A DNA stretch of 64,000 nt, taken from sequence record LR745208.1; one strand, given 5' to 3'. Below, piece by piece: positions 2,341 through 50,702 of this stretch; within the stretch, counting starts at the first letter, position 1; the number at the start of each line of letters is the position of its first letter. The translations under genes were made by a program, and so were the position numbers. The notes under the pieces were generated by a model. The model was given only the letters and a program-made list of their open reading frames with translations. It had not been told where the DNA came from and ran no database searches.

Positions 2341-2413
2341 TCAGGCTCCTGTATGAGGGAGCTGAATAGGGGAGGTAACGGATTCCGAAGAGTCGGAGGG
2401 GAGGAGACGCCAA

Positions 2414-2725
2414 CCGTTGACAACCTATACGCATTTATCCCTCTTGCGAGGTTTAGTGGGTATCGGTTGTTTTGGAGCTATGCGGGTGAGGCGCTTACGC
2501 GCCATACCCCCACAGTAAGCTCCGGGCTCATCGGTTTGAGCTCCTTCTAACAGGGATCTTGGTGATCTGAACCGCGAACGGTGCCTTCCATCCAAGATCG
2601 CTTTCACCGACTTCACTGGGGTTTTTAGGTTGATGTGTTTATCCTCAGAACGTCTGAGCACATTCAACCCCCCAACAAAATCCGCATGACTCTTCCTACC
2701 ACAGCTCTGGCAGACAAATCCGCAA
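2414..2725 (-). mobile_element. TnpB 3' remnant with omega-RNA/right end (IS607-like, internally deleted)
   Basis: Minus frame reads FVCQSCGRKSHADFVGGLNVLRRS (second CxxC plus RuvC-III HAD). It is followed by a structured tail ending TATAGGTTGTCAACGG, the same AACGG terminus as the TnpB element ending at 39855. Confidence 0.6.
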
Positions 2726-11033: not shown

Positions 11034-11762
11034 TTAGAGGACGCTTCCCGCGTCGTCATATGCGACGAGGGCTGGGGAAACCGTCCCGAGATACGAGAAG
11101 GTTGTACCAGTGAATCCCGCGAGCTGACCCTGTGCGAGAGAGATGTAGAACGAAGAGTCCATGACAAGGATGTCTGAGTAGGCATCGAAGTCGAAGTTCG
11201 CAGTGTTCCACGCAGGGGCCGATGCCTGGGCAGTGAACACACCACCTGCCTGAACCTGAGTACCCGCTGCAACGGTATAGGTTGCACCCGAGAGGACGCG
11301 CAGAACATCCATCACTGTGCCGGTCGACAGCGAACCACCAAGGGTCGTCAGTTCCGTACCCACACCCACCGAAGCCGCAAGGCTCACATTGATGCTCGCG
11401 AGGGTCAGAGAACCCGCCGCACGCATGATCACAATCAGGGCTGCCGCTGCGGCTGTAGCCTCTGCTGGGGTGAGAGCAACGCCAGCTGCACCAAGCGCCT
11501 GGACGTTAGCCATCAGGTACGCAGCGAGACCGGACTTGGCACCCGTGAAGGTCTTCACGCCACCAACGTCTGTCAGCACTACCGCTGCGGTCACTGGGGC
11601 CGCAACGTAACGTGGACCCTGAGCCGCTGGGCCCTGGGATGGGTTGAACTGTGACCGGTTTGGCCAAAAGTCTGTGACCTGGAGGGTCGAGTTGGGGATG
11701 TCCGCACGGCGGAGGCAGATGAACGGCATTGTCGTAGCTCCTGTAGATATTCTTTGTGCCAC
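11034..11762 (-). CDS. putative virion structural protein
   Basis: 242-aa Ala/Gly/Thr-rich ORF with a GGAG SD. Confidence 0.7.
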   Translation of the reverse strand: MAQRISTGATTMPFICLRRADIPNSTLQVTDFWPNRSQFNPSQGPAAQGPRYVAAPVTAAVVLTDVGGVKTFTGAKSGLAAYLMANVQALGAAGVALTPAEATAAAAALIVIMRAAGSLTLASINVSLAASVGVGTELTTLGGSLSTGTVMDVLRVLSGATYTVAAGTQVQAGGVFTAQASAPAWNTANFDFDAYSDILVMDSSFYISLAQGQLAGFTGTTFSYLGTVSPALVAYDDAGSVL

Positions 11763-11891
11763 ACCGAAGGTGGGGCCAATTGGGCGGAATGTGCTCCGCT
11801 CTCAATTATTAGGGGAGGGGATAAACTAGCAAGCGTGGAAACCCACACAGGTCTCCTGCGTTTAGGGTCTTATATCCCCTTTTAGGTACAA

Positions 11892-12347
11892 ATGAAGCTC
11901 TCAACTTGGGCCAAACAACAAGGCATCACATACAAAACGGCCTATCGAATGTTCCGAAATGGTACCTTGCCCATACGCCATGAGCAATTCCCAACAGGAA
12001 CTATCATTGTCCACCCTGAACAACCCACCATCCAACGAGTGGTGCTCTACGGGAAGGTAGCAAATGCCAGCCAGAAGGCGGACCTGGAAAAGCAACTAGA
12101 TAGGATGAGGGCCTTTGCAGCGACGCAAGGATGGGTGGTATCCGCTGAGGTGACAGACATTGGTAGCCTTCCTGACGGGTGTGGCAGGAATGCCATCAAA
12201 CTACTGGCGGACCCCACTGTGACCCTTATCGTGGTCGAACGGCAAGACCAGCTGGCCCAATTTGGATTCGGATTCACTATGGTGTCAGCAGCCCTATTGG
12301 CTTCTGGGAGACACATCATCGTAATGAACCTATCTATCCGACCTTAG
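11892..12347 (+). CDS. IS607-family TnpA-like serine recombinase derivative, catalytic residues substituted
   Basis: N-terminal MerR-like HTH (MKLSTWAKQQGITYKTAYRMFRNGTLP) followed by a resolvase fold with YGKVA in place of YARVS and DQLAQFG in place of DRLARFG. Confidence 0.85.
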   Translation: MKLSTWAKQQGITYKTAYRMFRNGTLPIRHEQFPTGTIIVHPEQPTIQRVVLYGKVANASQKADLEKQLDRMRAFAATQGWVVSAEVTDIGSLPDGCGRNAIKLLADPTVTLIVVERQDQLAQFGFGFTMVSAALLASGRHIIVMNLSIRP

Positions 12348-13093
12348 GCCGAGTTAACAACGGCAATCCGTACGGTGAACCACGGGTTCCCGTCCGGGCA
12401 TCCAAAAAACAGCTCTGGTATACCAGAACCTGTCATTGATATATCCTTGCCAGGAAGTATTACCGTTGGAGGCATCCCTGGATGGAAGGACACAAACAGG
12501 ACCTTCCCTGGATCCAGGTTCGCGATTGACACCGTGGTGGAGTACCCTGGGACCATGAAGTTCATTGTTCCGGGCATCATCGAGTCAGGAATGGCAGCTG
12601 GCCATGCCCCAAGAGCCATATTGGGTGCCCTACCCGAAACCGTGAATGTAGGCTCTTTGGTCGTGAAGAAATCATATGGGGGCACGATCATGATGGGCCC
12701 CTCTGGTAGGTAAGTGGCAGTTGCTACGTCCCAGATCTGCATTCGTAGGAATAGGGTCTGGTCATCCGTGGGGAGGTAGGGACCTCCAGGAACTGCCGCC
12801 GCCGTTGAGAAGTCATCCGGGTCGAACACCATCCTGGTCAACCCACGACTGGTCTCCTCCACGGCTGGCATTCTGCGACTTCTAATGGAGGGGGATAGGT
12901 AGCTCATCCCAGACAGGACATCGAACATCGGCAGGGTACCTCCCCCGCCTACCCCCGCCACTGCCCCATAGGCATCCACCAGACGGGCTGCCCCGGCCAC
13001 CCGGATCTTTGGGGCAGCATCCATCGGGAACGTCATGTTGATCATGTTTGGCGAACGGTACTGAATGGATGGGATCTCTCGCTGACGTGTCAT
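12344..13093 (-). CDS. hypothetical (probably virion) protein
   Basis: 249-aa ORF preceded by the upstream motif at 13121. Confidence 0.65.
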   Translation of the reverse strand: MTRQREIPSIQYRSPNMINMTFPMDAAPKIRVAGAARLVDAYGAVAGVGGGGTLPMFDVLSGMSYLSPSIRSRRMPAVEETSRGLTRMVFDPDDFSTAAAVPGGPYLPTDDQTLFLRMQIWDVATATYLPEGPIMIVPPYDFFTTKEPTFTVSGRAPNMALGAWPAAIPDSMMPGTMNFMVPGYSTTVSIANLDPGKVLFVSFHPGMPPTVILPGKDISMTGSGIPELFFGCPDGNPWFTVRIAVVNSA

Positions 13094-19926: not shown

Positions 19927-20528
19927 TTACCTGACCCAAACTACAAAAGGCGCCCGGACCTGTAGCATAAGGCGAACCTTGGTTCGCCCCCCCACGACTG
20001 GGGCACGAGTTAAGTATTCCCCCCTGGTAGGTACTGGAATTGTAGTCTCCCACCGTCCATCCTTGGTCCGGTACCAACCGAGTGGCCTTTCAATTGCCTC
20101 GTTCCGCCGCTCAATTGAAGTCACCACAAAGGCGCTAGCCAGAATGCCTTCCGCAGTGTGTCCTCGATGGTAACTGGTCATGCCAGGATCCGGCACATCC
20201 TGCCAAATCTGCATGTCCCCAGTGTAGTTTTTGCCCAAATAGGCACACCTCCATTCCCCATTGGGTCTACCGTCCCCGCCCCACAACAAATCACGGAGCA
20301 CCCATCTTGACCGCTTCGCTGCAACTCCTCCCGCCATTGCACAACCCGTTCCCTTCGGGCCGGAGCGAATGACCACAGGGTGAATCCATATTGTTCAATG
20401 TCCCTACGTTTCCGCTCAACTATCCCATCCAGTGTCTCACCAGCATGGGGCCCAACAGGAGACCAGAAACAGATGGCCCCCCCATTGGAAAGTGGCTTTG
20501 CAGCAGGAATCAAAAGGGAGTGGGTCAT
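19927..20528 (-). pseudogene. hypothetical gene with a single frameshift at an A5 run (20228-20232)
   Basis: Starts MTHSLL with an ATGA overlap on the 1229-aa gene. ...GGVPIWAK continues as NYTGDMQIWQD only in the -1 frame. Confidence 0.55.
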
Positions 20529-23500
20529 GAAAACAAATCCAGGACCGAAGAGTCCGGGTCCTCCTGGAGAGTTACACTCTTGGGCACATCCTTGACCTTT
20601 GGGGCCCCATTCTGGCACCCATCACAATATCGGCGGGTGTTGTTCTCGGAATCGTCCCGATAGGTACTGCCACAGCCCCTACATGCCTTGCTCCTGGCCT
20701 TGTCTCGACAGGTGGGGCACCGATTCACCATCTCCCCCTCACCCAGGACAAACCCCTCCTTACACAGAATGCAGGTTCGATTCCCCGTTGTTCGGTCCGC
20801 CCGAAAGTATGACTCATCCTTGGCCTTCCCTGACCGAAACATCTTCTCCCGCCTGCCACACTCTGGAGTACAGAACTTAGAGCAATTCTTGGAGCTGAGG
20901 TCAATGAAATCCTTCCCACAATTCCGGTAGGCACACTGCTTGGTCTTCTGTTGGATTTCCTTCACCTGCTTACATGTAGGGCACTTCGTGAACCTTCCCG
21001 GCGCCTCCGTCTCCCACGGCTTATGGCAGGTCAAGCAAACAAACGTACGCGCCTGACTAACAGGTGTGATCACCCGAACAGCATCCCTCTTCTGCTTGGC
21101 CCTCTCCGCATCCACCCGAAGCTTGCAGATCCTACAACGCCTTCCCTCACGGTCGGGACCCTCTAGAGCTAGGCCACAATCCATGCAGTGGGGTCCAGCA
21201 AGCCTGCAGGGGGCACAATATCCGCCTACCAAGTCACCAGATGGTATGGAACCCCCACACTTTTGACATCTGGATATGACCGGGACAAGTATCCCTTCAG
21301 GGACTCCCCCCTCGGATGGTACCAGCTCTGATGGTACAGGTGGGGCGGGCATGGTGTGTCCCACAGTGGGGATTCCAGTATTGACCCCGGCCCCAATGGA
21401 TACCCAACACAACACCAATTCATGATTGTCTGGTTGGGTAGGAGTTGGCATTGCATATTTAAGGATCTCTCTGGGGTTCCCCAACCCAGCTTGAGCAACC
21501 AGTCGTTTTGTGTCCTCAATGAGAGGGTACTGGACTTTCTCAATAAAGAAGTCGTCCACATTCAACACCAACCAGCCCCCCTGTTTGAGGCCATAAACTG
21601 CCTTCTGAATTACCGGACCCCAGAACCCCTTGAGCCACTTCTCATAGGTAGGGTATCGGACACTGGACTGGGTAGGCTCCGTCCCATAGACTTCCCGGCA
21701 CCAATATGGTGGGGATGTTAGGACCATATCCAAGCTCTGTGGAGTCACATCAAAATCCTCAGCGGGTAGATTGTGGAGTTCCACCTGTGCCCCAATCCCA
21801 TAGGAATTGACCCAGTCCCGTAAATGGTGAAGTCTGGTAAATGTTTCCGACTGTGGCTCACAGGCAATGTATTTGGGCATTGACTTGGACATCGTGGACC
21901 CAAGCAATCTCCCCCCATACCCTGCGCAGGGGTCCCATAAGGTTCCCCCTGGAGGGCAGAACCGATCTACTAGCACCTTTGCTGCTGAGGGACGGAAGTT
22001 ATACACCCCAGATCGCCAATAGAATCTCAGCCTTCCCCTAAGGTTAGCAGCGGTGGGCATGTCCCCCGAGGACAAAATCGAGGCTAATACCTTTCGAAGC
22101 ATACCCTCATCCTGAAACAGGTCCCAAGGACTCATTGTGGAGCCATACGACCGTGCCTTCCAAATATGAGTGGAGAATGCCTGACAGGATGCCTGCCCCA
22201 CTTGTCTTCTCTTTAGACAACCATCCTGAAGGATATGCCTCTCCTCCAAATCCCGGAGAATGTGGAGTTCCTCAGGCCTCGCAACATGATACGGGAATCC
22301 CTGTTTTCTCCAATGGGATTCCAACTCGACAAGCAGCCCTGCCTGATCCGTTTCAGATAGGGATTTCCACATCTGGCACCTATCTTTAACAGCATCCCAG
22401 AAAGATAACTTTTCCGGGGCTCCTTTATCCACTTGTGGAAGCATCCCCATGGGATGATGGTGTCCGGGGAGCTTGTGAAGCATATCCGGAGTCACAAACT
22501 CTCTCACCAACGCAAAGAACTTGTCGGCGGTTGCCGCCCGGATTGTAAGTTGTGGGCAAGAGGAGTCGATGCTACTTGGTTTCAAGTAGGTGTCCAGCCC
22601 AAACCTCTCCCCCACCCACCGCACCACATCCTCAGCTTGGTCCTTGGAGATATCCCCCAGAGCAAATGATGGGTTGTCTCCCAGGTGCCCATCGTCAAAG
22701 TACCAGTAAGCCAGAGATCTAGGTGTCAAAGACCGGATTACATGCTCAGGAAACACCTTCACCCCATCGGGGTAGAACAACTCCCGCATCTCCTTCAGCC
22801 AAACATGTTGAACCGTTAGAAACCCAAACGTAAAGGCTAGGGTACCATTGGGCATCTTCTTTTCCCCGTAGAAGAGGGGAAGGGCGTGGGGGGTCAAAAT
22901 GCTGTGGATCCTCCTAAGGTAGGTGAGCTGGTAATGAGTATGGGTGAGCCTACACTTGCCCCTCTCAGTCACATGAGCATCCCCAAGTAATGTGCCAATT
23001 AGAGTCTCCTTCTGCTCCTCGGTCCACTCCGTATGCTTCGTTGCTCGATCTGACTTCGAGATTGACCTGATTCCCCACCCCAATCTTCGATTGCGTATTG
23101 TTGGTTTCGTCACCCCATACAGTTTTGCAATGGTCCGGTCACCTGCCTGTTGGTATAAGTCTGCCAGGATTACCGGAGTCAACTCCTCTACGGGAAGGCA
23201 CCCAACGGGGGCACCCACCCGATGATGAGCAGACGGAATCCCCCACTTCTTTCGGTGGTAGGCAATTGCCACCCCACTCACCCCATAGAGTGCCCCAATC
23301 TCAATATCCGTTTTGGTGGCATACAAATCCCGGAGAGTTTCTTCAGTTAATCCTCGCCGGGCAGGTGCCCCGTGATTTGTGGGGGATACCTTTGTGACCA
23401 CCCCATACAAACGCTGTGCCTCTATTTGAGTGATAGGGCTGGCGACCACAGATGTGTCTGGCATTCTCCCCAACATACAGGAGGGTACAGCGTTTTGTAA

Positions 23501-24214
23501 TGTGCCTAGGAAATGGTTGGCTTGCTCCGGAAATTGAATGTGTGCCCCACTTGAGTTCTCCTGAAACTGTGGGTACAACCCAAGCTTATGACAAGCCTGA
23601 CTCAACACGTTCATTGTGGACTGATCGGGGCTTTTGTCAACGGAAATTCTCGGATCCCCTGTTAATGTGATGCCTCCCCTATCCAAGAACCACACGGCCA
23701 GAGACATTGGGTCCAACTCCAAGGAGGGAGGCACTACCAATACCCCCGCTGGGTAGAACTGATCGTAGTAGGGTCTCAACTGTGGGCAACCCCGTGTCGC
23801 CATCTGAAAACTACAATATAACCTGCCATTTTTCTTTGACCTGACTTCGTGAACCTCTTGCTTCACATATGGCCCCAGCATTTCCGCCTTCCACCGAATA
23901 TAACCCTCTTCGTTAATGGGATGACGCACCACCAACTTCGCCCCCCCACCCAGGGGGGTCATGTACCCATTTCCGAGCAGGCACCCGATCAATATGCCGT
24001 GTTGCTCAGGGGTTATCGGAGGCAGAACCCCCCCTGCTCGCTCTGCCCTTGTCAAAGTTGGGATTCCCCACCTCTTTCGCAGTTTCCCTACCTGGGGCTG
24101 AGTAAGCCCATACCGATTGGCAATGGCCACCTCGGAAAGACCCTGTGTCACATAGAGATCGGATAGGACATCCGCACTGAGTTGGAGAGGTTGGGGAAGT
24201 GATTCGGTAGTCAT
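20525..24214 (-). CDS. HTH x3 + LAGLIDADG x2 + amino-methyltransferase (SPPY, likely m4C) + Cys-rich Zn-finger fusion
   Basis: LIGCLLGNG/SLAVWFLDRG; LIGTLLGDA/SLAYWYFDDG; WDPCAGYGG (motif I); LTSPPYW (motif IV); more than eight CxxC pairs at the C-terminus. Confidence 0.8.
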   Translation of the reverse strand: MTTESLPQPLQLSADVLSDLYVTQGLSEVAIANRYGLTQPQVGKLRKRWGIPTLTRAERAGGVLPPITPEQHGILIGCLLGNGYMTPLGGGAKLVVRHPINEEGYIRWKAEMLGPYVKQEVHEVRSKKNGRLYCSFQMATRGCPQLRPYYDQFYPAGVLVVPPSLELDPMSLAVWFLDRGGITLTGDPRISVDKSPDQSTMNVLSQACHKLGLYPQFQENSSGAHIQFPEQANHFLGTLQNAVPSCMLGRMPDTSVVASPITQIEAQRLYGVVTKVSPTNHGAPARRGLTEETLRDLYATKTDIEIGALYGVSGVAIAYHRKKWGIPSAHHRVGAPVGCLPVEELTPVILADLYQQAGDRTIAKLYGVTKPTIRNRRLGWGIRSISKSDRATKHTEWTEEQKETLIGTLLGDAHVTERGKCRLTHTHYQLTYLRRIHSILTPHALPLFYGEKKMPNGTLAFTFGFLTVQHVWLKEMRELFYPDGVKVFPEHVIRSLTPRSLAYWYFDDGHLGDNPSFALGDISKDQAEDVVRWVGERFGLDTYLKPSSIDSSCPQLTIRAATADKFFALVREFVTPDMLHKLPGHHHPMGMLPQVDKGAPEKLSFWDAVKDRCQMWKSLSETDQAGLLVELESHWRKQGFPYHVARPEELHILRDLEERHILQDGCLKRRQVGQASCQAFSTHIWKARSYGSTMSPWDLFQDEGMLRKVLASILSSGDMPTAANLRGRLRFYWRSGVYNFRPSAAKVLVDRFCPPGGTLWDPCAGYGGRLLGSTMSKSMPKYIACEPQSETFTRLHHLRDWVNSYGIGAQVELHNLPAEDFDVTPQSLDMVLTSPPYWCREVYGTEPTQSSVRYPTYEKWLKGFWGPVIQKAVYGLKQGGWLVLNVDDFFIEKVQYPLIEDTKRLVAQAGLGNPREILKYAMPTPTQPDNHELVLCWVSIGAGVNTGIPTVGHTMPAPPVPSELVPSEGGVPEGILVPVISRCQKCGGSIPSGDLVGGYCAPCRLAGPHCMDCGLALEGPDREGRRCRICKLRVDAERAKQKRDAVRVITPVSQARTFVCLTCHKPWETEAPGRFTKCPTCKQVKEIQQKTKQCAYRNCGKDFIDLSSKNCSKFCTPECGRREKMFRSGKAKDESYFRADRTTGNRTCILCKEGFVLGEGEMVNRCPTCRDKARSKACRGCGSTYRDDSENNTRRYCDGCQNGAPKVKDVPKSVTLQEDPDSSVLDLFS

Positions 24215-36284: not shown

Positions 36285-36440
36285 ATGCGAAAGATTCCCA
36301 CTGCCTTCACGCTCGACCAACTCCTTATTGACTGGCTCAAGGCTGAGTCAATAAGGAGGGATATCACGATGTCCAAAATTGTCCGTGAACTGCTGATCCG
36401 TGAGATGGCTGCCCAACAGCCCCCGAAGGTACCCACCTAA
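36285..36440 (+). CDS. ribbon-helix-helix (CopG-like) protein upstream of TnpB
   Basis: MRKIPTAFTLDQLLIDWLKAESIRRDITMSKIVRELL; its stop lies 1 nt before the tnpB ATG. Confidence 0.7.
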   Translation: MRKIPTAFTLDQLLIDWLKAESIRRDITMSKIVRELLIREMAAQQPPKVPT

Positions 36441-36441
36441 C

Positions 36442-37683
36442 ATGGTATTGCGAGCCTATAAGGTGGAATTGGACCCCAACGACCGGCAACGGACGGACTT
36501 CCTCCGTCACTCCGGGGCCGTTCGGTTCATCTACAATTGGGGCCTCGCCACAATCAAACAGGACTACGAAACCAAGAAGGCCCAGACCCCTCCGGGTGAG
36601 AAGGTCAAAAATACCATATGTCCCCTGGACCTGAGTGCCAAGTTGCCTACCATGAAGGCCGGAGGCTTCCCTTGGTTGAAAAATGTTACAGCCCAATCCC
36701 TTCAACAGGCACTCCATCACTTAGATGCCGCCTACCAGGGGTTCTTCCGTCGAGTGAAGGCAGGTAAGACCCCAGGCTACCCACACTTCAAGAAACGGGG
36801 GGTGTCACGCAATTCTTTTCAGTTCCCACAAAATGTGGTGGTGACCAATACCCATGTCAAGCTCCCAAAGATCGGTCAAGTGCGGTTGGCCCGGCACGGC
36901 TATATCCCCACAGACCTAACCCCCAAGACCACCACAATCAGTGAACGAGCGGGTAGGTGGTTCGTGACAGTCCTGATGGAGGTTGGGGAACTCCCGAAGG
37001 TGGTTCCGACTGGTGGGGTGTTGGGGATCGATTTGGGGATCAAGACGTTAGTGGTCCTGTCGGAAGGGACCGTTTACGAGAACCCCAAGCACCTTGAACG
37101 AACCCAACGAAAACTAACACATTTACAACGGAAACTGGCCCGCCAGCAGAAAGGTTCCAACAGAAGGGCAAGGACCAAGGCAAGAATTGCCAAGGTCCAC
37201 GCCAGGATTGCAAATCAACGGGCAGACAGCATCCACAAGATGACCAGTGAGATCGTGAAAACCAAACGACCCACTGCGATTGTCATTGAGGACCTGAATG
37301 TCTCTGGAATGACCAAGAACCACAGTCTAGCTAGGTCGGTATCGTCAGCTTCTTTTGGGGAAATCCGACGACAACTCACCTACAAGACTGAGTGGTATGG
37401 GGTCCAGTTGGTGGTGGCAGACAGGTTCTTCCCATCCAGTAAGACCTGCTCTAAGTGTGGTGCAGTGAAGGACAAATTGTCCCTGGGGGATAGGACCTTC
37501 GTATGCGAGTCCTGTGGGCACACCCAAGATAGAGACTTGAATGCGTCCATGAACCTTCGTTCGTGGGGTGTAGCTTTTCTGGCCGGGGGAACCCCGGCAA
37601 CTGCTCGTGGAGGGGATGTAAGACCTGAAGCAATTCAGGCAAACTCCGTTGAAACGAGAACTGACCTGAGGATTGCCTCGTGA
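36442..37683 (+). CDS. tnpB: RNA-guided endonuclease TnpB (IS200/IS605 family)
   Basis: HTH AYKVELDPN; RuvC GIDLG, IEDL, DRDLNA; CSKC...CESC; all catalytic residues present. Confidence 0.95.
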   Translation: MVLRAYKVELDPNDRQRTDFLRHSGAVRFIYNWGLATIKQDYETKKAQTPPGEKVKNTICPLDLSAKLPTMKAGGFPWLKNVTAQSLQQALHHLDAAYQGFFRRVKAGKTPGYPHFKKRGVSRNSFQFPQNVVVTNTHVKLPKIGQVRLARHGYIPTDLTPKTTTISERAGRWFVTVLMEVGELPKVVPTGGVLGIDLGIKTLVVLSEGTVYENPKHLERTQRKLTHLQRKLARQQKGSNRRARTKARIAKVHARIANQRADSIHKMTSEIVKTKRPTAIVIEDLNVSGMTKNHSLARSVSSASFGEIRRQLTYKTEWYGVQLVVADRFFPSSKTCSKCGAVKDKLSLGDRTFVCESCGHTQDRDLNASMNLRSWGVAFLAGGTPATARGGDVRPEAIQANSVETRTDLRIAS

Positions 37684-39850: not shown

Positions 39851-41152
39851 CTATCCGTTATCCAAAACTGACCCATCTATCCCCGATTGGGAGTCAATGG
39901 TGTTTGGTGCTTGCCCAACCAGAAGTTTCGTTGTGTCATTCAGACCACAACCAGAGCTTCCAGGACAGCAAGCTGACACCGCGTAACTCGCGGCCAGTTT
40001 CTTTAGGTTAATCGCCGCGTTCAGGTCTCTATCGATTGTGAGCCCACACTCGGAGCACCTGAACGTTCGATCCGATAAGGTCAAATCATCCTTGACTGCC
40101 CCACACTTGGAGCAGGTCTTACTCGACGGGAAGAACCGATCTGCCCTAATGAGTTGTCCGCCCGACCTGCCTACCTTGTAGGTCAGCTGTCGGTGAAACT
40201 CTCCCAACCCAGCGTCAGCCATTGCTTTGCTTAGCTTCCGGTTCTTCATCATTCCTGAGATATTGAGGGACTCAATCACAATGGTTGACGCCTGCTTGGT
40301 TATCGCAGAGGTAGCCTTGTGGATCGTGTCCTTCCTGATATTGCTGACTCGATAATGCTGCCTTGCTAACTTGACAGCCGCCTTCTTCCTGTTGTTGGAC
40401 CCTTTTCTCTTACGGGACACTGACTTGTTGAGTTGACGGAGCTTCTTCTCAGTCGCCCTAAGAGCCTTTGGGTTCTCAAATACCTCCCCGTCACTCGTCA
40501 CCGCTAGGTGGGAGATACCCACGTCCACCCCAATGACATGATGGGGAAGTGGCTTGAGAGCTGGTTGGTCCATCTCGACCTGAACTGAAACAAACCACCT
40601 ACCCGCCTTCTCGGAGACCGTGGCCTTGAGGATCCTGACGCCACTGGTTGGAAGATAGTTGGACTCCTTCAGTCGAATGGTTCCTAAGTTGGGGAGTTGT
40701 ATCGATGTTTCCTGGACACTAATGGTTCCAGTCAGGGTGAAGCTCCCGATTCCCCTCTTGCGGGACTTGAACTTGGGGAATCCTTTCTTCTTAGCCCCCT
40801 CTCGGCATCGTTGGAAGAAGTTGGACATAGCCTTGTCGAGATTTCGTAGGGCCTCTTGAGGGGCACATTTGGATACCTCATACAGCCAAGGAACCCCGCC
40901 TTCCTCAACAGGCAACTTCTTGAGTTCATTCAACTCTCGGTGAAGGTCAATGGCTGATAATCTCTTCCCAGTGTTCCAGTAGAACTCCGTCTTCCGGGCC
41001 AGTCCCCAATTGTAAGCCCACCTACCGGCCCCAGTTGATTGGACAAGGAGACTCCGCTCCTTGTCATTAGGGTTCAGCTCGGTTTTGAACGACCGAACTA
41101 CCTTCCCAGGGGGACTCTGGTACTTGACTTTCTTTTTCTTCCCAGACGTCAT
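39851..41152 (-). CDS. tnpB: RNA-guided endonuclease TnpB (IS607-type)
   Basis: SFKTELNPN; GVDVG, IESL, DRDLNA; CSKC...CSEC; intact. Confidence 0.95.
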   Translation of the reverse strand: MTSGKKKKVKYQSPPGKVVRSFKTELNPNDKERSLLVQSTGAGRWAYNWGLARKTEFYWNTGKRLSAIDLHRELNELKKLPVEEGGVPWLYEVSKCAPQEALRNLDKAMSNFFQRCREGAKKKGFPKFKSRKRGIGSFTLTGTISVQETSIQLPNLGTIRLKESNYLPTSGVRILKATVSEKAGRWFVSVQVEMDQPALKPLPHHVIGVDVGISHLAVTSDGEVFENPKALRATEKKLRQLNKSVSRKRKGSNNRKKAAVKLARQHYRVSNIRKDTIHKATSAITKQASTIVIESLNISGMMKNRKLSKAMADAGLGEFHRQLTYKVGRSGGQLIRADRFFPSSKTCSKCGAVKDDLTLSDRTFRCSECGLTIDRDLNAAINLKKLAASYAVSACCPGSSGCGLNDTTKLLVGQAPNTIDSQSGIDGSVLDNG

Positions 41153-41205
41153 TCGAAATGGCCTTTCAGATCCATTTCCGCTAGGTTTTGGCAGCTCATC
41201 CCTGT
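39855..41205 (-). mobile_element. solo IS607-like TnpB element between the candidate terS and terL
   Basis: Right end GGGTCAGTTTTGGATAACGG; flanked by GGATAGC at 39850-39856 and 41206-41212. Confidence 0.7.
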
Positions 41206-48272: not shown

Positions 48273-48892
48273 TGCCGCCCCCATGGAACCGTCTCGTCAA
48301 TATCGTCAATGGAAACCTCATCAATGGCAGACATGTTGTCCCCATATGTATGATGGTCTCCGTCCACCTCCACCAATGAGCGAGGGACAATCGTGATCGT
48401 GTCTATGGACCGAAGGGCAATTCGAATGGCCACCCGGTCATCAAACACATCAACTACACGTCCCTCCATGTGGGAGTAGTTCCCACCTATGATCCTGACC
48501 AAGGACCCTATCTCGATGTCCGAGCACAGGATTTCCTGAAGCTTGCGGCGCATCTCAGTGATCTTGGTGTCAGGGATGGTTTGAAGAACTCGAAGCCCGC
48601 GTGGACCGGAGATAGAAAATACCTTAGCCACCAGGGAATGCCGCTCCAACGCAAAATATCGCGTCTCGGGAAGCCCACTGGCTACAAAAGCATATCCCTC
48701 AATGAGTCTTACGGAAACAGTACGGCCACCTTTTGTGTAGGTGGCATAGGGAATGAAAACAGGAAACCCATCCTCCACCCCCAAGTCACGTCGTAGCCCT
48801 TGAGACAGTTTGCCGTCAATCGCCTTCAGCTCCCCCATCCGGGAAAGCTCCAGGGTCACCCAGGTTATCTGATCCCTCGTGTCCAATGTCAA
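48269..48892 (-). CDS. NusG/RfaH-like transcription elongation factor
   Basis: NGN-like LIEGYAFV; KOW GSLVRIIGGNYSHMEGRVVDV. Confidence 0.8.
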   Translation of the reverse strand: MTLDTRDQITWVTLELSRMGELKAIDGKLSQGLRRDLGVEDGFPVFIPYATYTKGGRTVSVRLIEGYAFVASGLPETRYFALERHSLVAKVFSISGPRGLRVLQTIPDTKITEMRRKLQEILCSDIEIGSLVRIIGGNYSHMEGRVVDVFDDRVAIRIALRSIDTITIVPRSLVEVDGDHHTYGDNMSAIDEVSIDDIDETVPWGRQ

Positions 48893-50702
48893 CGACCTTT
48901 GAGGCTTGTAGCTCCGATACGCGAAGCTTGACGAGACTGAAAAGCTCTAAAGGTTTAAGTCCGACTGGTTTCAAGCCACTTCCCAGTTGGGAAGAATGAA
49001 CTACGGGTGAGGGAAGATCAGCCTTGATTGCTCTTGGGTGAACAAACACGCCATCGATGAGTTGTGGTTTCCCATCCTGCACTTTGACATTACCATCGAT
49101 ATTGGACTTTGTGGTAGCAATTCTGGGAATATCGATAGGACGTTGAACCCCCCTATGAAGTTGGGCCAAATCGCACAATAGCATTGATGCTGTCGGCCTC
49201 CCCGGTCTGGACGCCAACTTGTCAGCATAATCCAGCAGCTCATCCCCCAGAGCCCGTCCCTCCTCTACCAGCCGCTGATTGATATAGGATGGGATAGGCA
49301 GAGGACCCAACGTGGACCGGTACACCAGCAATGACAGGTCCACCAACTTCTCGTACACCGTAATGGGGGACATGGCCTTCAGGACTGTTTCAGCCTTGGC
49401 CACCGCTGAAGGCAAATCCCGCTTGACATCCAATAGGAGTGCCAGCAACTCATTCATGAAATCAAGGTGCAAGTACTGGGATACATTGGGAATGTTCACA
49501 GCCCCCAACATAGAGACACCTTCCACAGCCTTCAGGCTGTCTCGGATATGGCACTCCGTGATCTCCCCAATGAGCCTAAGGGCCTCCATGTCATACTCGA
49601 TTGCCTCACTCTGGCAGATCTGGGCAAGTCTCTCGGCCACCTGTTCCGGGACTACTGGCTTAACAATGAATGCCGGAGCACACCGGCTCAGGATAGTATT
49701 TCGCATCTTCTCGGGCTCAGTGGTGCAGAAGATGCAGACCAAGAGCTTGTCCTGAGTGCCGGGATAATTGTCCTCCAGGGGCTTCAGGAGAGCATCCAGG
49801 GCGTCCGCAGAGAGACGGTGACAGTTCGATACCAGGATAGACCCTGGGGCCCCATCCGATGTCACGAAAAAATTGTGGGTACCTCCCACGGTCACATCAT
49901 AGACCATAGTGGGAATAGACTCCACTCTCAGGACCAGCCGGGCATCCCCCTTTCCCACATGTGTTGCAAGGTAGGTGTAGGCTGGGAGTCCATGGGGGTC
50001 TGGTGGATGCCCACGGAATCCTCCTAGCGAGGGGTCCGGCTCCACAAGCGTGTCATCCGCCACAAGGTCGCCCGCTTCCACCCAACCCCTGTTACTGGTG
50101 TAGAACCGGTGATTTGATGTGACGGTAAGGGTCACTCCAGTACTGAAAGTCAATGTAAGAGTGTCTCGCACCCCCTGAGAAAACCATCCTTCTAGGGGTG
50201 CCCATACGGTCCTATCCGTCGCCAGATCCTGGGAAAGCACATACCCCTGGTACCTGGATTCAACAAGGGTCCGAATGGACACCGGCCCCTCCGTGGTGAC
50301 AAGCTGGGCATCCTCAGTGAAGCACTCGTCAAAAAGGTATAGCTTCCGCTTCCCCGAGAAGGTGCTATACTGGATCTCCTCCACGATCTTACGGATGCTG
50401 TCTTTTCCGCTGTTAGTGGCCGCATCAATCTCGAAGAAGTCAGTCGAGGAGCCATTCTCTAGGAGTGACTTGCAGGAGGCACACTGGTCACAGGGGGCAC
50501 CATCAACGGGCTGGCCACACAGAAGTGCCCTGGCCAGGATCCTTCCGAGGGTCGTTTTACCCGACCCAAATGGGCCCGACAACAGGTAGGATTGATGGAA
50601 CCCGGCCCCAGACTTCACGTATTGCTGGAGGATCTGGATGGTGCTCTTCTGTCCCAGCACATCAGCATAGGTCCTGGGGCGAAATTTCGTGTCTAAAGAC
50701 AT
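48816..50702 (-). CDS. dnaX: DNA polymerase III gamma/tau-like clamp loader with a mini-intein
   Basis: KFRPRTYADVLGQ, GPFGSGKTT, C4 Zn module, EIDAA, LFDE-[intein]-CHRLS, TILSRC. Confidence 0.9.
   Translation of the reverse strand: MSLDTKFRPRTYADVLGQKSTIQILQQYVKSGAGFHQSYLLSGPFGSGKTTLGRILARALLCGQPVDGAPCDQCASCKSLLENGSSTDFFEIDAATNSGKDSIRKIVEEIQYSTFSGKRKLYLFDECFTEDAQLVTTEGPVSIRTLVESRYQGYVLSQDLATDRTVWAPLEGWFSQGVRDTLTLTFSTGVTLTVTSNHRFYTSNRGWVEAGDLVADDTLVEPDPSLGGFRGHPPDPHGLPAYTYLATHVGKGDARLVLRVESIPTMVYDVTVGGTHNFFVTSDGAPGSILVSNCHRLSADALDALLKPLEDNYPGTQDKLLVCIFCTTEPEKMRNTILSRCAPAFIVKPVVPEQVAERLAQICQSEAIEYDMEALRLIGEITECHIRDSLKAVEGVSMLGAVNIPNVSQYLHLDFMNELLALLLDVKRDLPSAVAKAETVLKAMSPITVYEKLVDLSLLVYRSTLGPLPIPSYINQRLVEEGRALGDELLDYADKLASRPGRPTASMLLCDLAQLHRGVQRPIDIPRIATTKSNIDGNVKVQDGKPQLIDGVFVHPRAIKADLPSPVVHSSQLGSGLKPVGLKPLELFSLVKLRVSELQASKVVDIGHEGSDNLGDPGAFPDGGAEGD
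49824..50324 (-). mobile_element. mini-intein (167 aa) in Walker B of DnaX
   Basis: Begins CFTEDA; block B VTSNHRF; ends VYDVTV...HNF...LVSN followed by Cys+1; no endonuclease domain. Confidence 0.9.

What the first reader, a model, noticed from the sequence alone, without database searches (positions are those of the whole stretch)
11892..12347. IS607 TnpA with every catalytic residue replaced but the ORF and HTH intact: possible domesticated DNA-binding regulator
Seen: YGKVA instead of YARVS (Arg and nucleophile Ser lost) and ERQDQLAQFG instead of ExxDRLARFG (both Arg lost), while the MerR-like HTH, the fold and the reading frame are preserved; there is no tnpB downstream. Known: serine recombinases need this Ser and these Arg residues. 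Inferred: four targeted losses without any stop or frameshift look like selection for binding without cutting, for example repression of IS607/TnpB elements (two IS607-type ends are in this window) or of phage genes. This would parallel the domestication of TnpB into TldR repressors.
Basis: partly seen in the sequence, partly recalled or inferred. Interest (0 to 1): 0.65.

Follow-up and report, generated by a model that had tools for sequence, protein, structure and literature searches.

The report
Dead, truncated IS607 transposase in jumbo phage
A 485 kb groundwater phage carries the leftover of an IS607 insertion whose transposase can no longer cut DNA but has kept its DNA-binding domain intact under selection, so it probably survives as a DNA-binding protein, and similar dead versions recur in other IS607 elements.

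Summary
ORF 11892-12347 (+) encodes a 151-aa IS607 TnpA derivative. R55K, S57A (the nucleophile), R98G, R118Q, R120Q and R123Q replace near-invariant residues. No tnpB follows.

It is a lineage-specific insertion. Six diverged relatives of this jumbo phage have the two flanking genes adjacent with no such gene, and five partial relative genomes have no IS607 TnpA at all.

Uniform decay is rejected. None of 16 conserved winged-helix positions changed, against 11 of 31 conserved catalytic-domain positions (p=0.0085). The branch is lengthened about 4-fold in the catalytic domain only. There are no stops or frameshifts (joint neutral probability 0.001 or less).

The exhaustive search also found about ten other, independently arisen, dead and helix-E-less TnpA forms. 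All four whose context I read sit upstream of an intact tnpB.

Best reading (about 0.5): a non-catalytic DNA-binding remnant acting as a repressor or inhibitor at IS607-type ends. Main rival (about 0.35): a functionless relic. No target site, expression or long-term conservation in this phage could be shown.

The parts
11892..12347 (+). ORF of 151 aa: an IS607 TnpA derivative that is catalytically dead and lacks helix E
11892..12032 (+). Residues 1-47: winged-helix (MerR-like) DNA-binding domain; all 16 family-conserved positions are retained
   Evidence: H3-10, H14-22, strands 29-32 and 38-41; pLDDT 88-93
12033..12326 (+). Residues 48-145: serine-recombinase alpha/beta core, strands beta1 to beta4, with the active site replaced
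   Evidence: 6dgb, 3lhk and 6dgc rank first, rmsd 2.2-2.6 A
12054..12062 (+). Codons 55-57, AAG GTA GCA = K-V-A in place of R-V-S; the Arg and the nucleophile Ser are lost
12183..12185 (+). Codon 98, GGC = Gly in place of the conserved Arg of the SG.N..R motif
12240..12260 (+). Codons 117-123, R-Q-D-Q-L-A-Q in place of H-R-D-R-L-A-R; three Arg and the His are replaced
12264..12275 (+). Tandem GGATTC GGATTC, an in-frame 6-nt duplication that adds two residues (FGFG) at the start of helix D, which is part of the core dimer interface in IS1535 TnpA
   Evidence: PMC6188088 places F126 at the interface
12327..12347 (+). The last six codons and the stop. The protein ends 7 residues after beta4, in the linker that normally leads to helix E. 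The TAG overlaps the TAA of the convergent gene on the minus strand
11809..11817 (+). GGGGAGGGG, the candidate left junction of the IS607 insertion, 74 bp upstream of the ATG. It is G-rich and TAM-like, and intact relatives have a G-run at -55 to -70
   Evidence: PMC6188088 and PMC13565253 describe GG termini and a G-rich 5' flank. This is an inference
11818..11891 (+). Presumed left-end remnant. It contains an 8-bp inverted repeat (11816-11823 and 11873-11880) and two TTTAGG copies 20 bp apart. No phased 9-bp repeat family was detected
11034..11762 (-). Flanking phage gene p242; in relatives it lies directly next to p249
12344..13093 (-). Flanking phage gene p249. Its C-terminus is conserved in relatives that lack the insertion, so the sequence beyond the ORF's stop is phage backbone
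39851..41152 (-). Solo TnpB, shown as context only. It is 56% identical to the TnpB partner of the nearest intact IS607 and keeps the RuvC motifs. It is a possible former partner or present target, but this is not shown
36400..37683 (+). Second solo TnpB, shown as context only

Best explanation
An IS607 element once inserted between two structural-module genes of this jumbo phage, just downstream of a G-run. What remains is the left end and the first 80% of tnpA. Helix E, tnpB and the right end are gone. The encoded 151-aa protein keeps the N-terminal winged-helix DNA-binding domain and the alpha/beta core up to beta4, but it has lost the nucleophile Ser and every active-site Arg. It therefore cannot cut or rejoin DNA (shown). 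The DNA-binding domain and the reading frame have stayed under purifying selection while the active site eroded (shown statistically). From this I infer that the protein is still made and still binds DNA. It would most likely bind as a dimer through core helices B and D, at the short repeated motifs of IS607-type ends and promoters. It is the natural counterpart of the engineered IS1535 TnpA delta(147-193). That mutant still binds transposon ends but cannot assemble the paired-end complex. The likeliest role is a repressor or competitive inhibitor. It could repress its own left-end promoter, or block related IS607 or TnpB elements that enter or reside in the phage. The step from 'binds DNA' to 'represses or inhibits' is inference only. 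The same conversion, dead active site plus loss of helix E, has happened independently in several other IS607 lineages. In those lineages the short protein stays translationally coupled to an intact tnpB.
For: Identity and loss of catalysis. Fold retained to beta4, mean pLDDT 81, with IS607 TnpA catalytic domains as the top structural matches. Lineage-specific insertion: in six relatives p249 and p242 lie 85-170 bp apart with no tnpA. The nearest full-length relatives are canonical tnpA+tnpB IS607 elements in phage-like contigs. Selection: 0 of 16 conserved HTH positions changed against 11 of 31 catalytic positions, Fisher p=0.0085, and 9 departures at columns conserved at 90% or more against a maximum of 4 in 112 relatives. 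The catalytic-domain branch is 0.554 against a median of 0.134, while the HTH branch of 0.124 is ordinary. Identity to the nearest active relative is 78% in the HTH against 59% in the catalytic domain, which exceeds 99.9% of active pairs of similar catalytic identity. The neutral simulation gives a joint P of 0.001 or less. Several replaced codons need 2-3 nucleotide changes, so the erosion is old. All seven DNA copies examined keep the frame, whereas a truly decaying relative (L031, L033) is frameshifted. Biochemical precedent: helix-E-deleted IS1535 TnpA binds ends as complex 1 but fails to form paired-end complexes, and the core dimer forms through helices B and D (PMC6188088). Recurrence: the dead and short states are associated, odds ratio 9.6, p=1.4e-5, and 11 of 15 truncated dead forms end within 10 residues of beta4, p=2e-4. 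P0234, P0142, P0199 and P0137 all sit upstream of tnpB, two of them with 4-nt overlaps. The sisters P0234 and P0142 share the truncation and are 82% identical in the HTH against 39% in the core.
Against: The gene is found in only one near-identical phage population, so long-term retention in this phage is not shown. There is no expression evidence: no RNA run was listed, and there is no sigma-70-like promoter on the plus strand. The gene lies antisense inside a long minus-strand operon. No repeated binding motif could be defined upstream, and no sequence is shared with the TnpB loci. The FG duplication sits at the dimer interface and may weaken dimerisation. The one variant copy (L020) differs by a cluster of 9 substitutions in codons 22-41. 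That shows recombination with another tnpA homologue, so repeated gene conversion, not selection on the protein, could keep the HTH part looking conserved. The selection signal may also date from an earlier life inside a dead-tnpA plus tnpB element. In the other dead lineages, ORF maintenance could serve translational coupling to tnpB, and only about half of them show the HTH-versus-core asymmetry. dN/dS could not be estimated because dS is saturated.
Confidence: 0.5

Rival explanations
1. It is a functionless relic. One deletion removed helix E, tnpB and the right end. The remnant ORF is now drifting and will eventually be lost. Its apparent constraint is inherited from an earlier stage, or is maintained by gene conversion from active tnpA copies.
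For: The gene is restricted to one phage population and absent from all diverged relatives. No tnpB is adjacent, unlike all four other dead forms I examined. The stop codon is borrowed from the phage backbone at the junction. A recombination patch in L020 shows that conversion does occur in the HTH region. There is no promoter, expression evidence or target site. Most other dead forms are singletons on short contigs.
Against: Neutral decay of the whole gene is rejected, with a joint P of 0.001 or less. The catalytic core also keeps its structural residues and an open frame despite 9-11 hits at conserved positions and multi-nucleotide codon changes. A real decaying copy in the same clade shows a frameshift. 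The truncation falls exactly at the domain boundary, as in ten other independent cases.
Confidence: 0.35
2. It is domesticated for phage gene regulation. The winged-helix protein binds phage DNA, for example the p249/p242 junction or other late-gene regions, and controls structural-gene expression independently of IS607 or TnpB elements.
For: The gene sits inside the structural module at a junction that is variable among relatives. A promoter-like site on the minus strand (11832 to 11805) faces p242 within the presumed left-end remnant. An independent 53-aa ORF consisting only of the TnpA HTH is packed among structural and terminase genes of another phage (L009).
Against: There is no conservation in related phages, which regulate the same genes without it. 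The promoter match is at the level expected by chance (1 found, 1.1 expected). No binding site is known.
Confidence: 0.1
3. It is still an active recombinase that uses a shifted nucleophile (Ser60 of NAS) or non-canonical residues.
For: A Ser is present three residues after the canonical position. Some named IS607 transposases have RVAS instead of RVSS (P0030, P0036, P0047).
Against: All of R55, R98, R118, R120 and R123 are replaced, helix E is absent, and there is no right end. Helix-E-deleted IS1535 TnpA cannot form the paired-end complex. Ser60 lies in helix A at the position of the family's Asp.
Confidence: 0.02

Closest known systems
IS607-family TnpA serine transposase (IS607, IS1535, ISC1926; NCBIfam NF033518; structures 6dgb and 6dgc)
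   Same: N-terminal winged-helix domain, short linker, and resolvase-type alpha/beta core. It is 57-63% identical to intact phage-borne IS607 TnpA proteins.
   Different: It has no nucleophile Ser, no active-site Arg, no helix E, no tnpB and no right end. It scores below the family's curated cut-off.
Engineered IS1535 TnpA delta(147-193) (Chen et al. 2018, eLife, PMC6188088)
   Same: It ends at the same structural point, just after beta4. That mutant still binds transposon ends (complex 1) but is defective in paired-end complex assembly.
   Different: The engineered protein keeps its active site. The natural one also has an FG duplication at the helix-D interface. No binding data exist for it.
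Truncated or inactive transposase derivatives that inhibit transposition (Tn5 Inh, IS1 InsA, P-element KP repressor; from general knowledge, not tested here)
   Same: The end-binding domain is retained without catalysis, and the expected action is competition for ends or poisoning of oligomers.
   Different: Those act on a co-resident active transposase of the same element. No active IS607 TnpA is present in this phage record.
TldR (nuclease-dead TnpB repressors) and Arc repressors of IS605 elements (bioRxiv 10.64898/2026.09.24.754181; review PMC13565253)
   Same: A transposon-derived or transposon-borne DNA-binding protein is kept for regulation, not catalysis. Both occur in the TnpB transposon world and often in phages.
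   Different: TldR derives from TnpB and is RNA-guided. Arc is a separate ribbon-helix-helix gene. Here the transposase itself is the inactivated protein. TldR and Arc have demonstrated targets and conserved contexts, and this protein has neither.

Membership tests
IS607-family TnpA serine transposase | N-terminal MerR-like winged-helix DNA-binding domain | tested here: met
   Alignment A1. All 16 conserved positions are kept. The AF2 model shows a helix-helix-hairpin at residues 3-41 with pLDDT 88-93.
IS607-family TnpA serine transposase | Serine-recombinase catalytic core fold | tested here: met
   phmmer to 6dgb gives E 2e-12. Foldseek top matches are 3lhk, 6dgb and 6dgc at E about 1e-7 and rmsd 2.2-2.6 A.
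IS607-family TnpA serine transposase | Nucleophile Ser in the Y-x-R-x-S motif | tested here: not met
   The motif reads YGKVA. Ser is present in 114 of 120 relatives.
IS607-family TnpA serine transposase | Active-site arginines (Y-x-R, SG.N..R and E-H-R-D-R-L-x-R motifs) | tested here: not met
   R55K, R98G, R118Q, R120Q and R123Q.
IS607-family TnpA serine transposase | C-terminal helix E region, needed for cooperative end binding and synapsis | tested here: not met
   The HMM match stops at model position 153 of 187. The alignment and the model both end 7 residues after beta4.
IS607-family TnpA serine transposase | Reaches the curated family score cut-off | tested here: not met
   NF033518 scores 93 bits against a 110 cut-off. 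Pfam Resolvase scores 20.1 against 23.3.
IS607 element | tnpB immediately downstream of tnpA, followed by a right end | tested here: not met
   A convergent phage gene abuts the stop. There is no TnpB or TnpA remnant nearby.
IS607 element | Left end with a GG terminus after a G-rich flank, and phased subterminal direct repeats | tested here: inconclusive
   GGGGAGGGG lies at -74, as in relatives. No phased repeat family was detected, and the region does not align to the left ends of relatives.
Domesticated (exapted) transposase-derived regulator | Catalytic residues lost while the binding domain is under purifying selection | tested here: met
   The caveat is possible gene conversion.
Domesticated (exapted) transposase-derived regulator | Stable, syntenic conservation across diverged host genomes | tested here: not met
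   The gene is absent at the junction in six relatives and absent from five partial relative records. All copies are near-identical.
Domesticated (exapted) transposase-derived regulator | Defined DNA target and a regulatory effect | not testable with these tools
   This needs EMSA, ChIP or reporter assays. The motif searches gave nothing usable.
Transposition-inhibitor derivative of a transposase | An active transposase of the same family is present for it to act on | tested here: not met
   It is the only NF033518 match in the 485 kb record. Targets would have to come from co-infecting elements or the host.

The most novel reading that the evidence does not exclude
IS607 TnpA has repeatedly been converted into a non-catalytic, helix-E-less, winged-helix DNA-binding protein. 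This protein controls TnpB and omega-RNA expression or blocks transposition, making it a TnpA-side counterpart of TldR and Arc. In this jumbo phage the converted protein has outlived its own tnpB and acts in trans on the phage's solo TnpB elements or on incoming IS607 copies.
Probability: 0.2. Interest if true: 0.75.

Novelty: new variant of a known kind. Interest (0 to 1): 0.52.

Why it matters
TnpB-bearing transposons are under intense study as ancestors of Cas12 and as genome editors, and their regulation is only now being worked out (Arc, TldR). A transposase that has lost catalysis and its synapsis helix, but keeps its end-binding domain, would be a new regulatory layer if it is functional. 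It is found here alone and elsewhere coupled to intact tnpB. Such a protein could explain how TnpB elements persist after losing autonomous mobility, especially in phages. It would also give a natural, compact protein that recognises IS607 ends. If it is only a relic, it still documents a preferred decay route of IS607 elements: loss of helix E at the domain boundary, followed by erosion of the active site.

Tried and rejected
- Stop-codon recoding. The HMM match reads through the TAG to model position 167. However, all three stops are used in the window, and the post-stop sequence is the antisense of the conserved C-terminus of p249. Rejected.
- dN/dS between the window and the 98% copy. The 10 differences include 9 clustered in codons 22-41, a recombination patch, so the ratio is not informative.
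- dN/dS against intact relatives. dS is saturated.
- Alignment of the upstream DNA to the relatives' intergenic spacers and to the left ends of intact IS607 elements. No usable homology.
- Search for phased direct repeats upstream. None found, only an 8-bp inverted repeat.
- Rfam on the whole window. No match.
- Shared sequence between the tnpA-like locus and the TnpB loci. None.
- Cryptic TnpA remnants elsewhere in the window or next to the record's other TnpB loci. None.
- GC3 of the gene is 0.556, against a phage mean of 0.609 with sd 0.036. Not informative.
- Expression. No listed run holds the stretch as RNA.
- P0122 and P0123, which looked like truncated alleles, are only alternative gene-caller starts on identical DNA.
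- A single clade of dead TnpA proteins, suggested by the shared VVER signature, is not supported. The dead forms are scattered over the tree.
- Housekeeping. No alternative genetic code was named, the window has no N stretches, and I took none of the contigs for human DNA.

Full report
**What is there.** The window is part of a 485,040-bp linear virus record, CheckV 92% complete, from a groundwater metagenome. Nearly all long ORFs lie on the minus strand. ORF 11892..12347 is one of the few on the plus strand. It sits between two minus-strand genes of unknown function in a structural-looking module: p242 (11034..11762) and p249 (12344..13093). Its TAG stop (12345-12347) overlaps the TAA of p249 (12346-12344).

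**Identity.** The 151-aa product matches the NCBIfam IS607 transposase model at E 1.6e-26. The score is only 93 bits against a curated cut-off of 110, and the match covers only model positions 2-153 of 187. It also matches PHROG 6620 'transposase' and the catalytic domains of IS1535 and ISC1926 TnpA (6dgb at E 2e-12, and 6dgc). An AlphaFold2 model built on a 20-sequence alignment has mean pLDDT 81. It shows an N-terminal winged helix (helices 3-10 and 14-22, hairpin 29-41) and a resolvase-type alpha/beta core that ends with strand beta4 at residues 141-144. Foldseek places IS607-type TnpA catalytic domains first, at rmsd 2.2-2.6 A.

I compared the protein with 120 relatives from the word search. 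It reads K at 55 (R in 117), A at 57 (S in 114), G at 98 (R in 116), Q at 118 (R or K in 113), Q at 120 (R in 114) and Q at 123 (R in 108). It also has G93L, N95D and H117R. The protein stops 7 residues after beta4. Several replaced codons need two or three nucleotide changes: GGG to CTT, TCA to AAT, GAC to AGC, CAT to CGG, and CGA to GGC. The erosion is therefore not recent. No tnpB follows, and there is no cryptic TnpA or TnpB remnant nearby. All three stop codons are in ordinary use. The in-frame stretch beyond the TAG is the antisense of p249's conserved C-terminus. Read-through and recoding are therefore excluded.

**Origin.** The nearest full-length relatives are 57-63% identical, and the two whose context I read (P0002, P0004) are canonical IS607 elements. 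They have tnpA overlapping tnpB and sit in phage-like contigs that carry thymidine kinase, a DNA methylase and DNA polymerase A.

Six diverged relatives of this jumbo phage have p249 at 56-70% identity to the window's copy. In all six, p249 and p242 are adjacent, 85-170 bp apart, with nothing between them. A seventh has a 3-kb insertion of fibre-like genes at the same junction. None of five relative records (29-59% complete) has any IS607 TnpA match. The gene is thus a lineage-specific insertion at a variable junction.

A G-run (GGGGAGGGG, 11809-11817) lies 74 bp upstream of the ATG. Intact relatives have a G-run 55-70 bp upstream. The literature says IS607 elements end in GG and insert downstream of G-rich, TAM-like sequence. 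This is a plausible left junction, by inference. The right junction is at or just left of 12344. It follows that helix E, tnpB and the right end were deleted, or never arrived.

**Is it decaying or maintained?** All other copies I could fetch belong to the same phage. The exact protein is on record on 15 contigs. Six DNA copies from several samples are identical over the gene and its immediate flanks. One 820-bp contig (L020) differs at 10 positions, 9 of them within codons 22-41 (5 synonymous codon changes, 3 non-synonymous). That is a recombination patch, not steady divergence. Orthologue-based dN/dS is therefore impossible, and dS against intact relatives is saturated.

Four indirect tests all point the same way:
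- **Conserved positions.** In columns conserved at 80% or more among 112 full-length relatives, the query changes 0 of 16 in the winged-helix domain and 11 of 31 in the catalytic domain (Fisher p=0.0085). At the 90% level it has 9 departures, against a maximum of 4 in any relative.
- **Branch lengths.** On a fixed ML topology its terminal branch is 0.124 for the HTH domain (rank 23 of 40, median 0.140). For the catalytic domain it is 0.554 (rank 1, median 0.134).
- **Identity asymmetry.** Identity to the nearest active relative is 78% in the HTH and 59% in the core. That asymmetry exceeds 99.9% of active pairs of similar core identity.
- **Neutral simulation.** I mutated an intact relative's gene at random. 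No number of substitutions gives more than 0.001 joint probability of no stop, 0 of 12 HTH markers hit, and at least 9 of 25 catalytic markers hit.

By contrast, a relative in the same clade that really is decaying (L031, L033) has a frameshift right after the RV of the active-site motif. Whole-gene neutral decay is therefore rejected.

Two caveats remain. First, the L020 patch shows that gene conversion from other tnpA genes reaches the HTH-coding part, and conversion could mimic constraint. Second, the constraint may have acted before the element reached its present state.

**A wider pattern.** My claim of restriction rests on an absence of relatives, so I ran the exhaustive search of 1.84 billion representatives. 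Beyond the query's own cluster, the best hits are 49-50% identical. Among the 150 best, 33 of the 215 alignable sequences (pooled with the first search) have two or more key active-site positions altered. Eleven of those also end within 10 residues after beta4.

Dead and short are strongly associated (odds ratio 9.6, p=1.4e-5). Of the 15 dead forms truncated anywhere after beta4, 11 end within the first 10 residues, p=2e-4 against a uniform expectation. They are scattered over the tree. The query groups with the active P0002-P0015 clade, not with other dead forms, so these are independent events.

I read four contexts, and all four have a tnpB downstream. P0234 and P0142 are sister proteins from different 50% clusters, in phage-like contigs from three samples each, and each overlaps tnpB by 4 nt. 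P0199 lies in a Ktedonobacterales MAG and has an extra 209-aa ORF before tnpB. P0137 is followed by a TnpB-like ORF. P0234 and P0142 share the truncation and are 82% identical in the HTH but 39% in the core.

Not all dead forms show that asymmetry: five are at or above the 96th percentile and five are unremarkable. Most are singletons on short contigs. I take this as evidence for a preferred and sometimes long-lived state, not as proof of a functional family.

**Mechanism.** Chen et al. 2018 (PMC6188088) showed four relevant things:
- The N-terminal domain of IS607-family TnpA binds 9-bp motifs repeated in helical phase inside the ends.
- The catalytic cores dimerise through helices B and D, independently of helix E.
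- Helix E is needed for cooperative filament and paired-end complex formation.
- IS1535 TnpA delta(147-193), which ends after beta4, still forms the simple end-bound complex 1 but not paired-end complexes.

The window protein is the natural equivalent of that mutant, with the active site removed as well. The most economical reading is a dimeric end-binding protein that can occupy IS607-type motifs without synapsis or cleavage. That would make it a repressor of a left-end promoter, or a competitive inhibitor of related transposases. This is inferred.

I could not define a motif, and no sequence is shared between its upstream region and the TnpB loci. The phage has six TnpB-like matches. Two full-length solo genes lie in the window. 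One of them (39851-41152) is 56% identical to the TnpB partner of the nearest intact IS607 and keeps the RuvC motifs. It may be the former partner or a present target, but nothing shows this.

Positions 2414-2440 are the edge of a 306-nt repeat (2413-2718). The repeat is 84-90% identical to the 3' parts of three 485-495-aa TnpB-like genes elsewhere in the phage. Its minus-strand frame is open and includes the zinc-ribbon and HAD motif. Positions 39855-39880 and 41160-41205 are simply the two ends of the solo tnpB. None of these could be tied to TnpA binding.

**Literature.** Full-text searches found no description of catalytically dead or helix-E-less IS607 TnpA proteins. The TnpB census notes only occasional extra HTH proteins in one serine-recombinase-associated branch. 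The nearest concepts are TldR and the Arc repressor of IS605 elements.

**Verdict.** Loss of catalysis is certain. The origin as a lineage-specific IS607 insertion is well supported. Selection for a non-catalytic DNA-binding protein is supported by several indirect tests, but it is not demonstrated in this phage. The specific role of repressor or inhibitor is inference. The gene is a new variant of a known kind, of moderate interest, and the recurrence of the same conversion next to intact tnpB genes elsewhere raises that interest somewhat.

Noticed in passing
window 2413-2718: A 306-nt repeat, 84-90% identical to the 3' parts of three 485-495-aa TnpB-like genes elsewhere in the same phage (L004/L005, L006, L007). 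Its minus-strand frame is open for about 97 codons and includes CQSCG...HAD. It sits in a 415-bp gap that has no full gene. It could be a TnpB 3' remnant or a stand-alone guide-RNA module.
   Followed up: partly
window 36400-37683 (+) and 39851-41152 (-): Two solo TnpB genes, 44% identical to each other, with no tnpA next to either. The second is 56% identical to the TnpB of the nearest intact IS607 (L021) and keeps the RuvC motifs GVDVG, IESLN and DRDLNAA. Four more TnpB-like matches lie elsewhere in the 485 kb record.
   Followed up: partly
L086:4001-5706, L090:264-1954, L084:4001-6494, L092:158-1488: Other IS607 lineages carry catalytically dead, helix-E-less TnpA proteins (140-154 aa) directly upstream of intact tnpB. 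Two of them have 4-nt overlaps with tnpB. This state is recurrent and arose independently several times.
   Followed up: partly
L009:6001-6162: A 53-aa ORF consisting only of the IS607 TnpA winged-helix domain, 59% identical to residues 1-44 of the query. It is tightly packed between a 920-aa fibre-like gene and genes of 216 and 546 aa in an AT-rich phage contig.
   Followed up: no
L020:122-577 compared with window 11955-12012: The only variant copy differs by 9 substitutions clustered in codons 22-41, the wing of the winged helix. Five codon changes are synonymous and three are not. This looks like a gene-conversion patch from another tnpA homologue.
   Followed up: partly
window 20525-24214 (-): A 1229-aa ORF with two LAGLIDADG stretches (aa 403-548), a weak N6/N4 methylase match and a CGNR zinc finger. 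It may be a gene invaded by an intein or a homing endonuclease.
   Followed up: no
window 48816-50702 (-): A clamp-loader-like AAA+ protein (DNA_pol3_delta2) interrupted by a HINT/intein splicing domain at about aa 153-280.
   Followed up: no
L012:6754-9821: A related jumbo phage has a 3-kb insertion of three fibre-like genes (115, 312 and 540 aa) at the same p249/p242 junction. This junction is therefore a variable spot.
   Followed up: partly
L031:1942-2320 and L033:1457-1892: Intact-looking IS607 left ends with a sigma-70-like promoter, but the tnpA is frameshifted just after YARV. This is a truly decaying copy in the same clade and is useful as a contrast.
   Followed up: partly
P0030, P0036, P0047: Several full-length proteins, some named IS607 transposase by NCBI, read YARVAS instead of YARVSS. 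The Ser is shifted by one position while all the Arg residues are intact. Whether these proteins are active is unknown.
   Followed up: no
window 11832-11805 (-): A promoter-like site (TTGCTA, 16 nt spacer, AATAAT) inside the presumed left-end remnant, facing the p242 start. The count is what chance would give (1 found, 1.1 expected).
   Followed up: no
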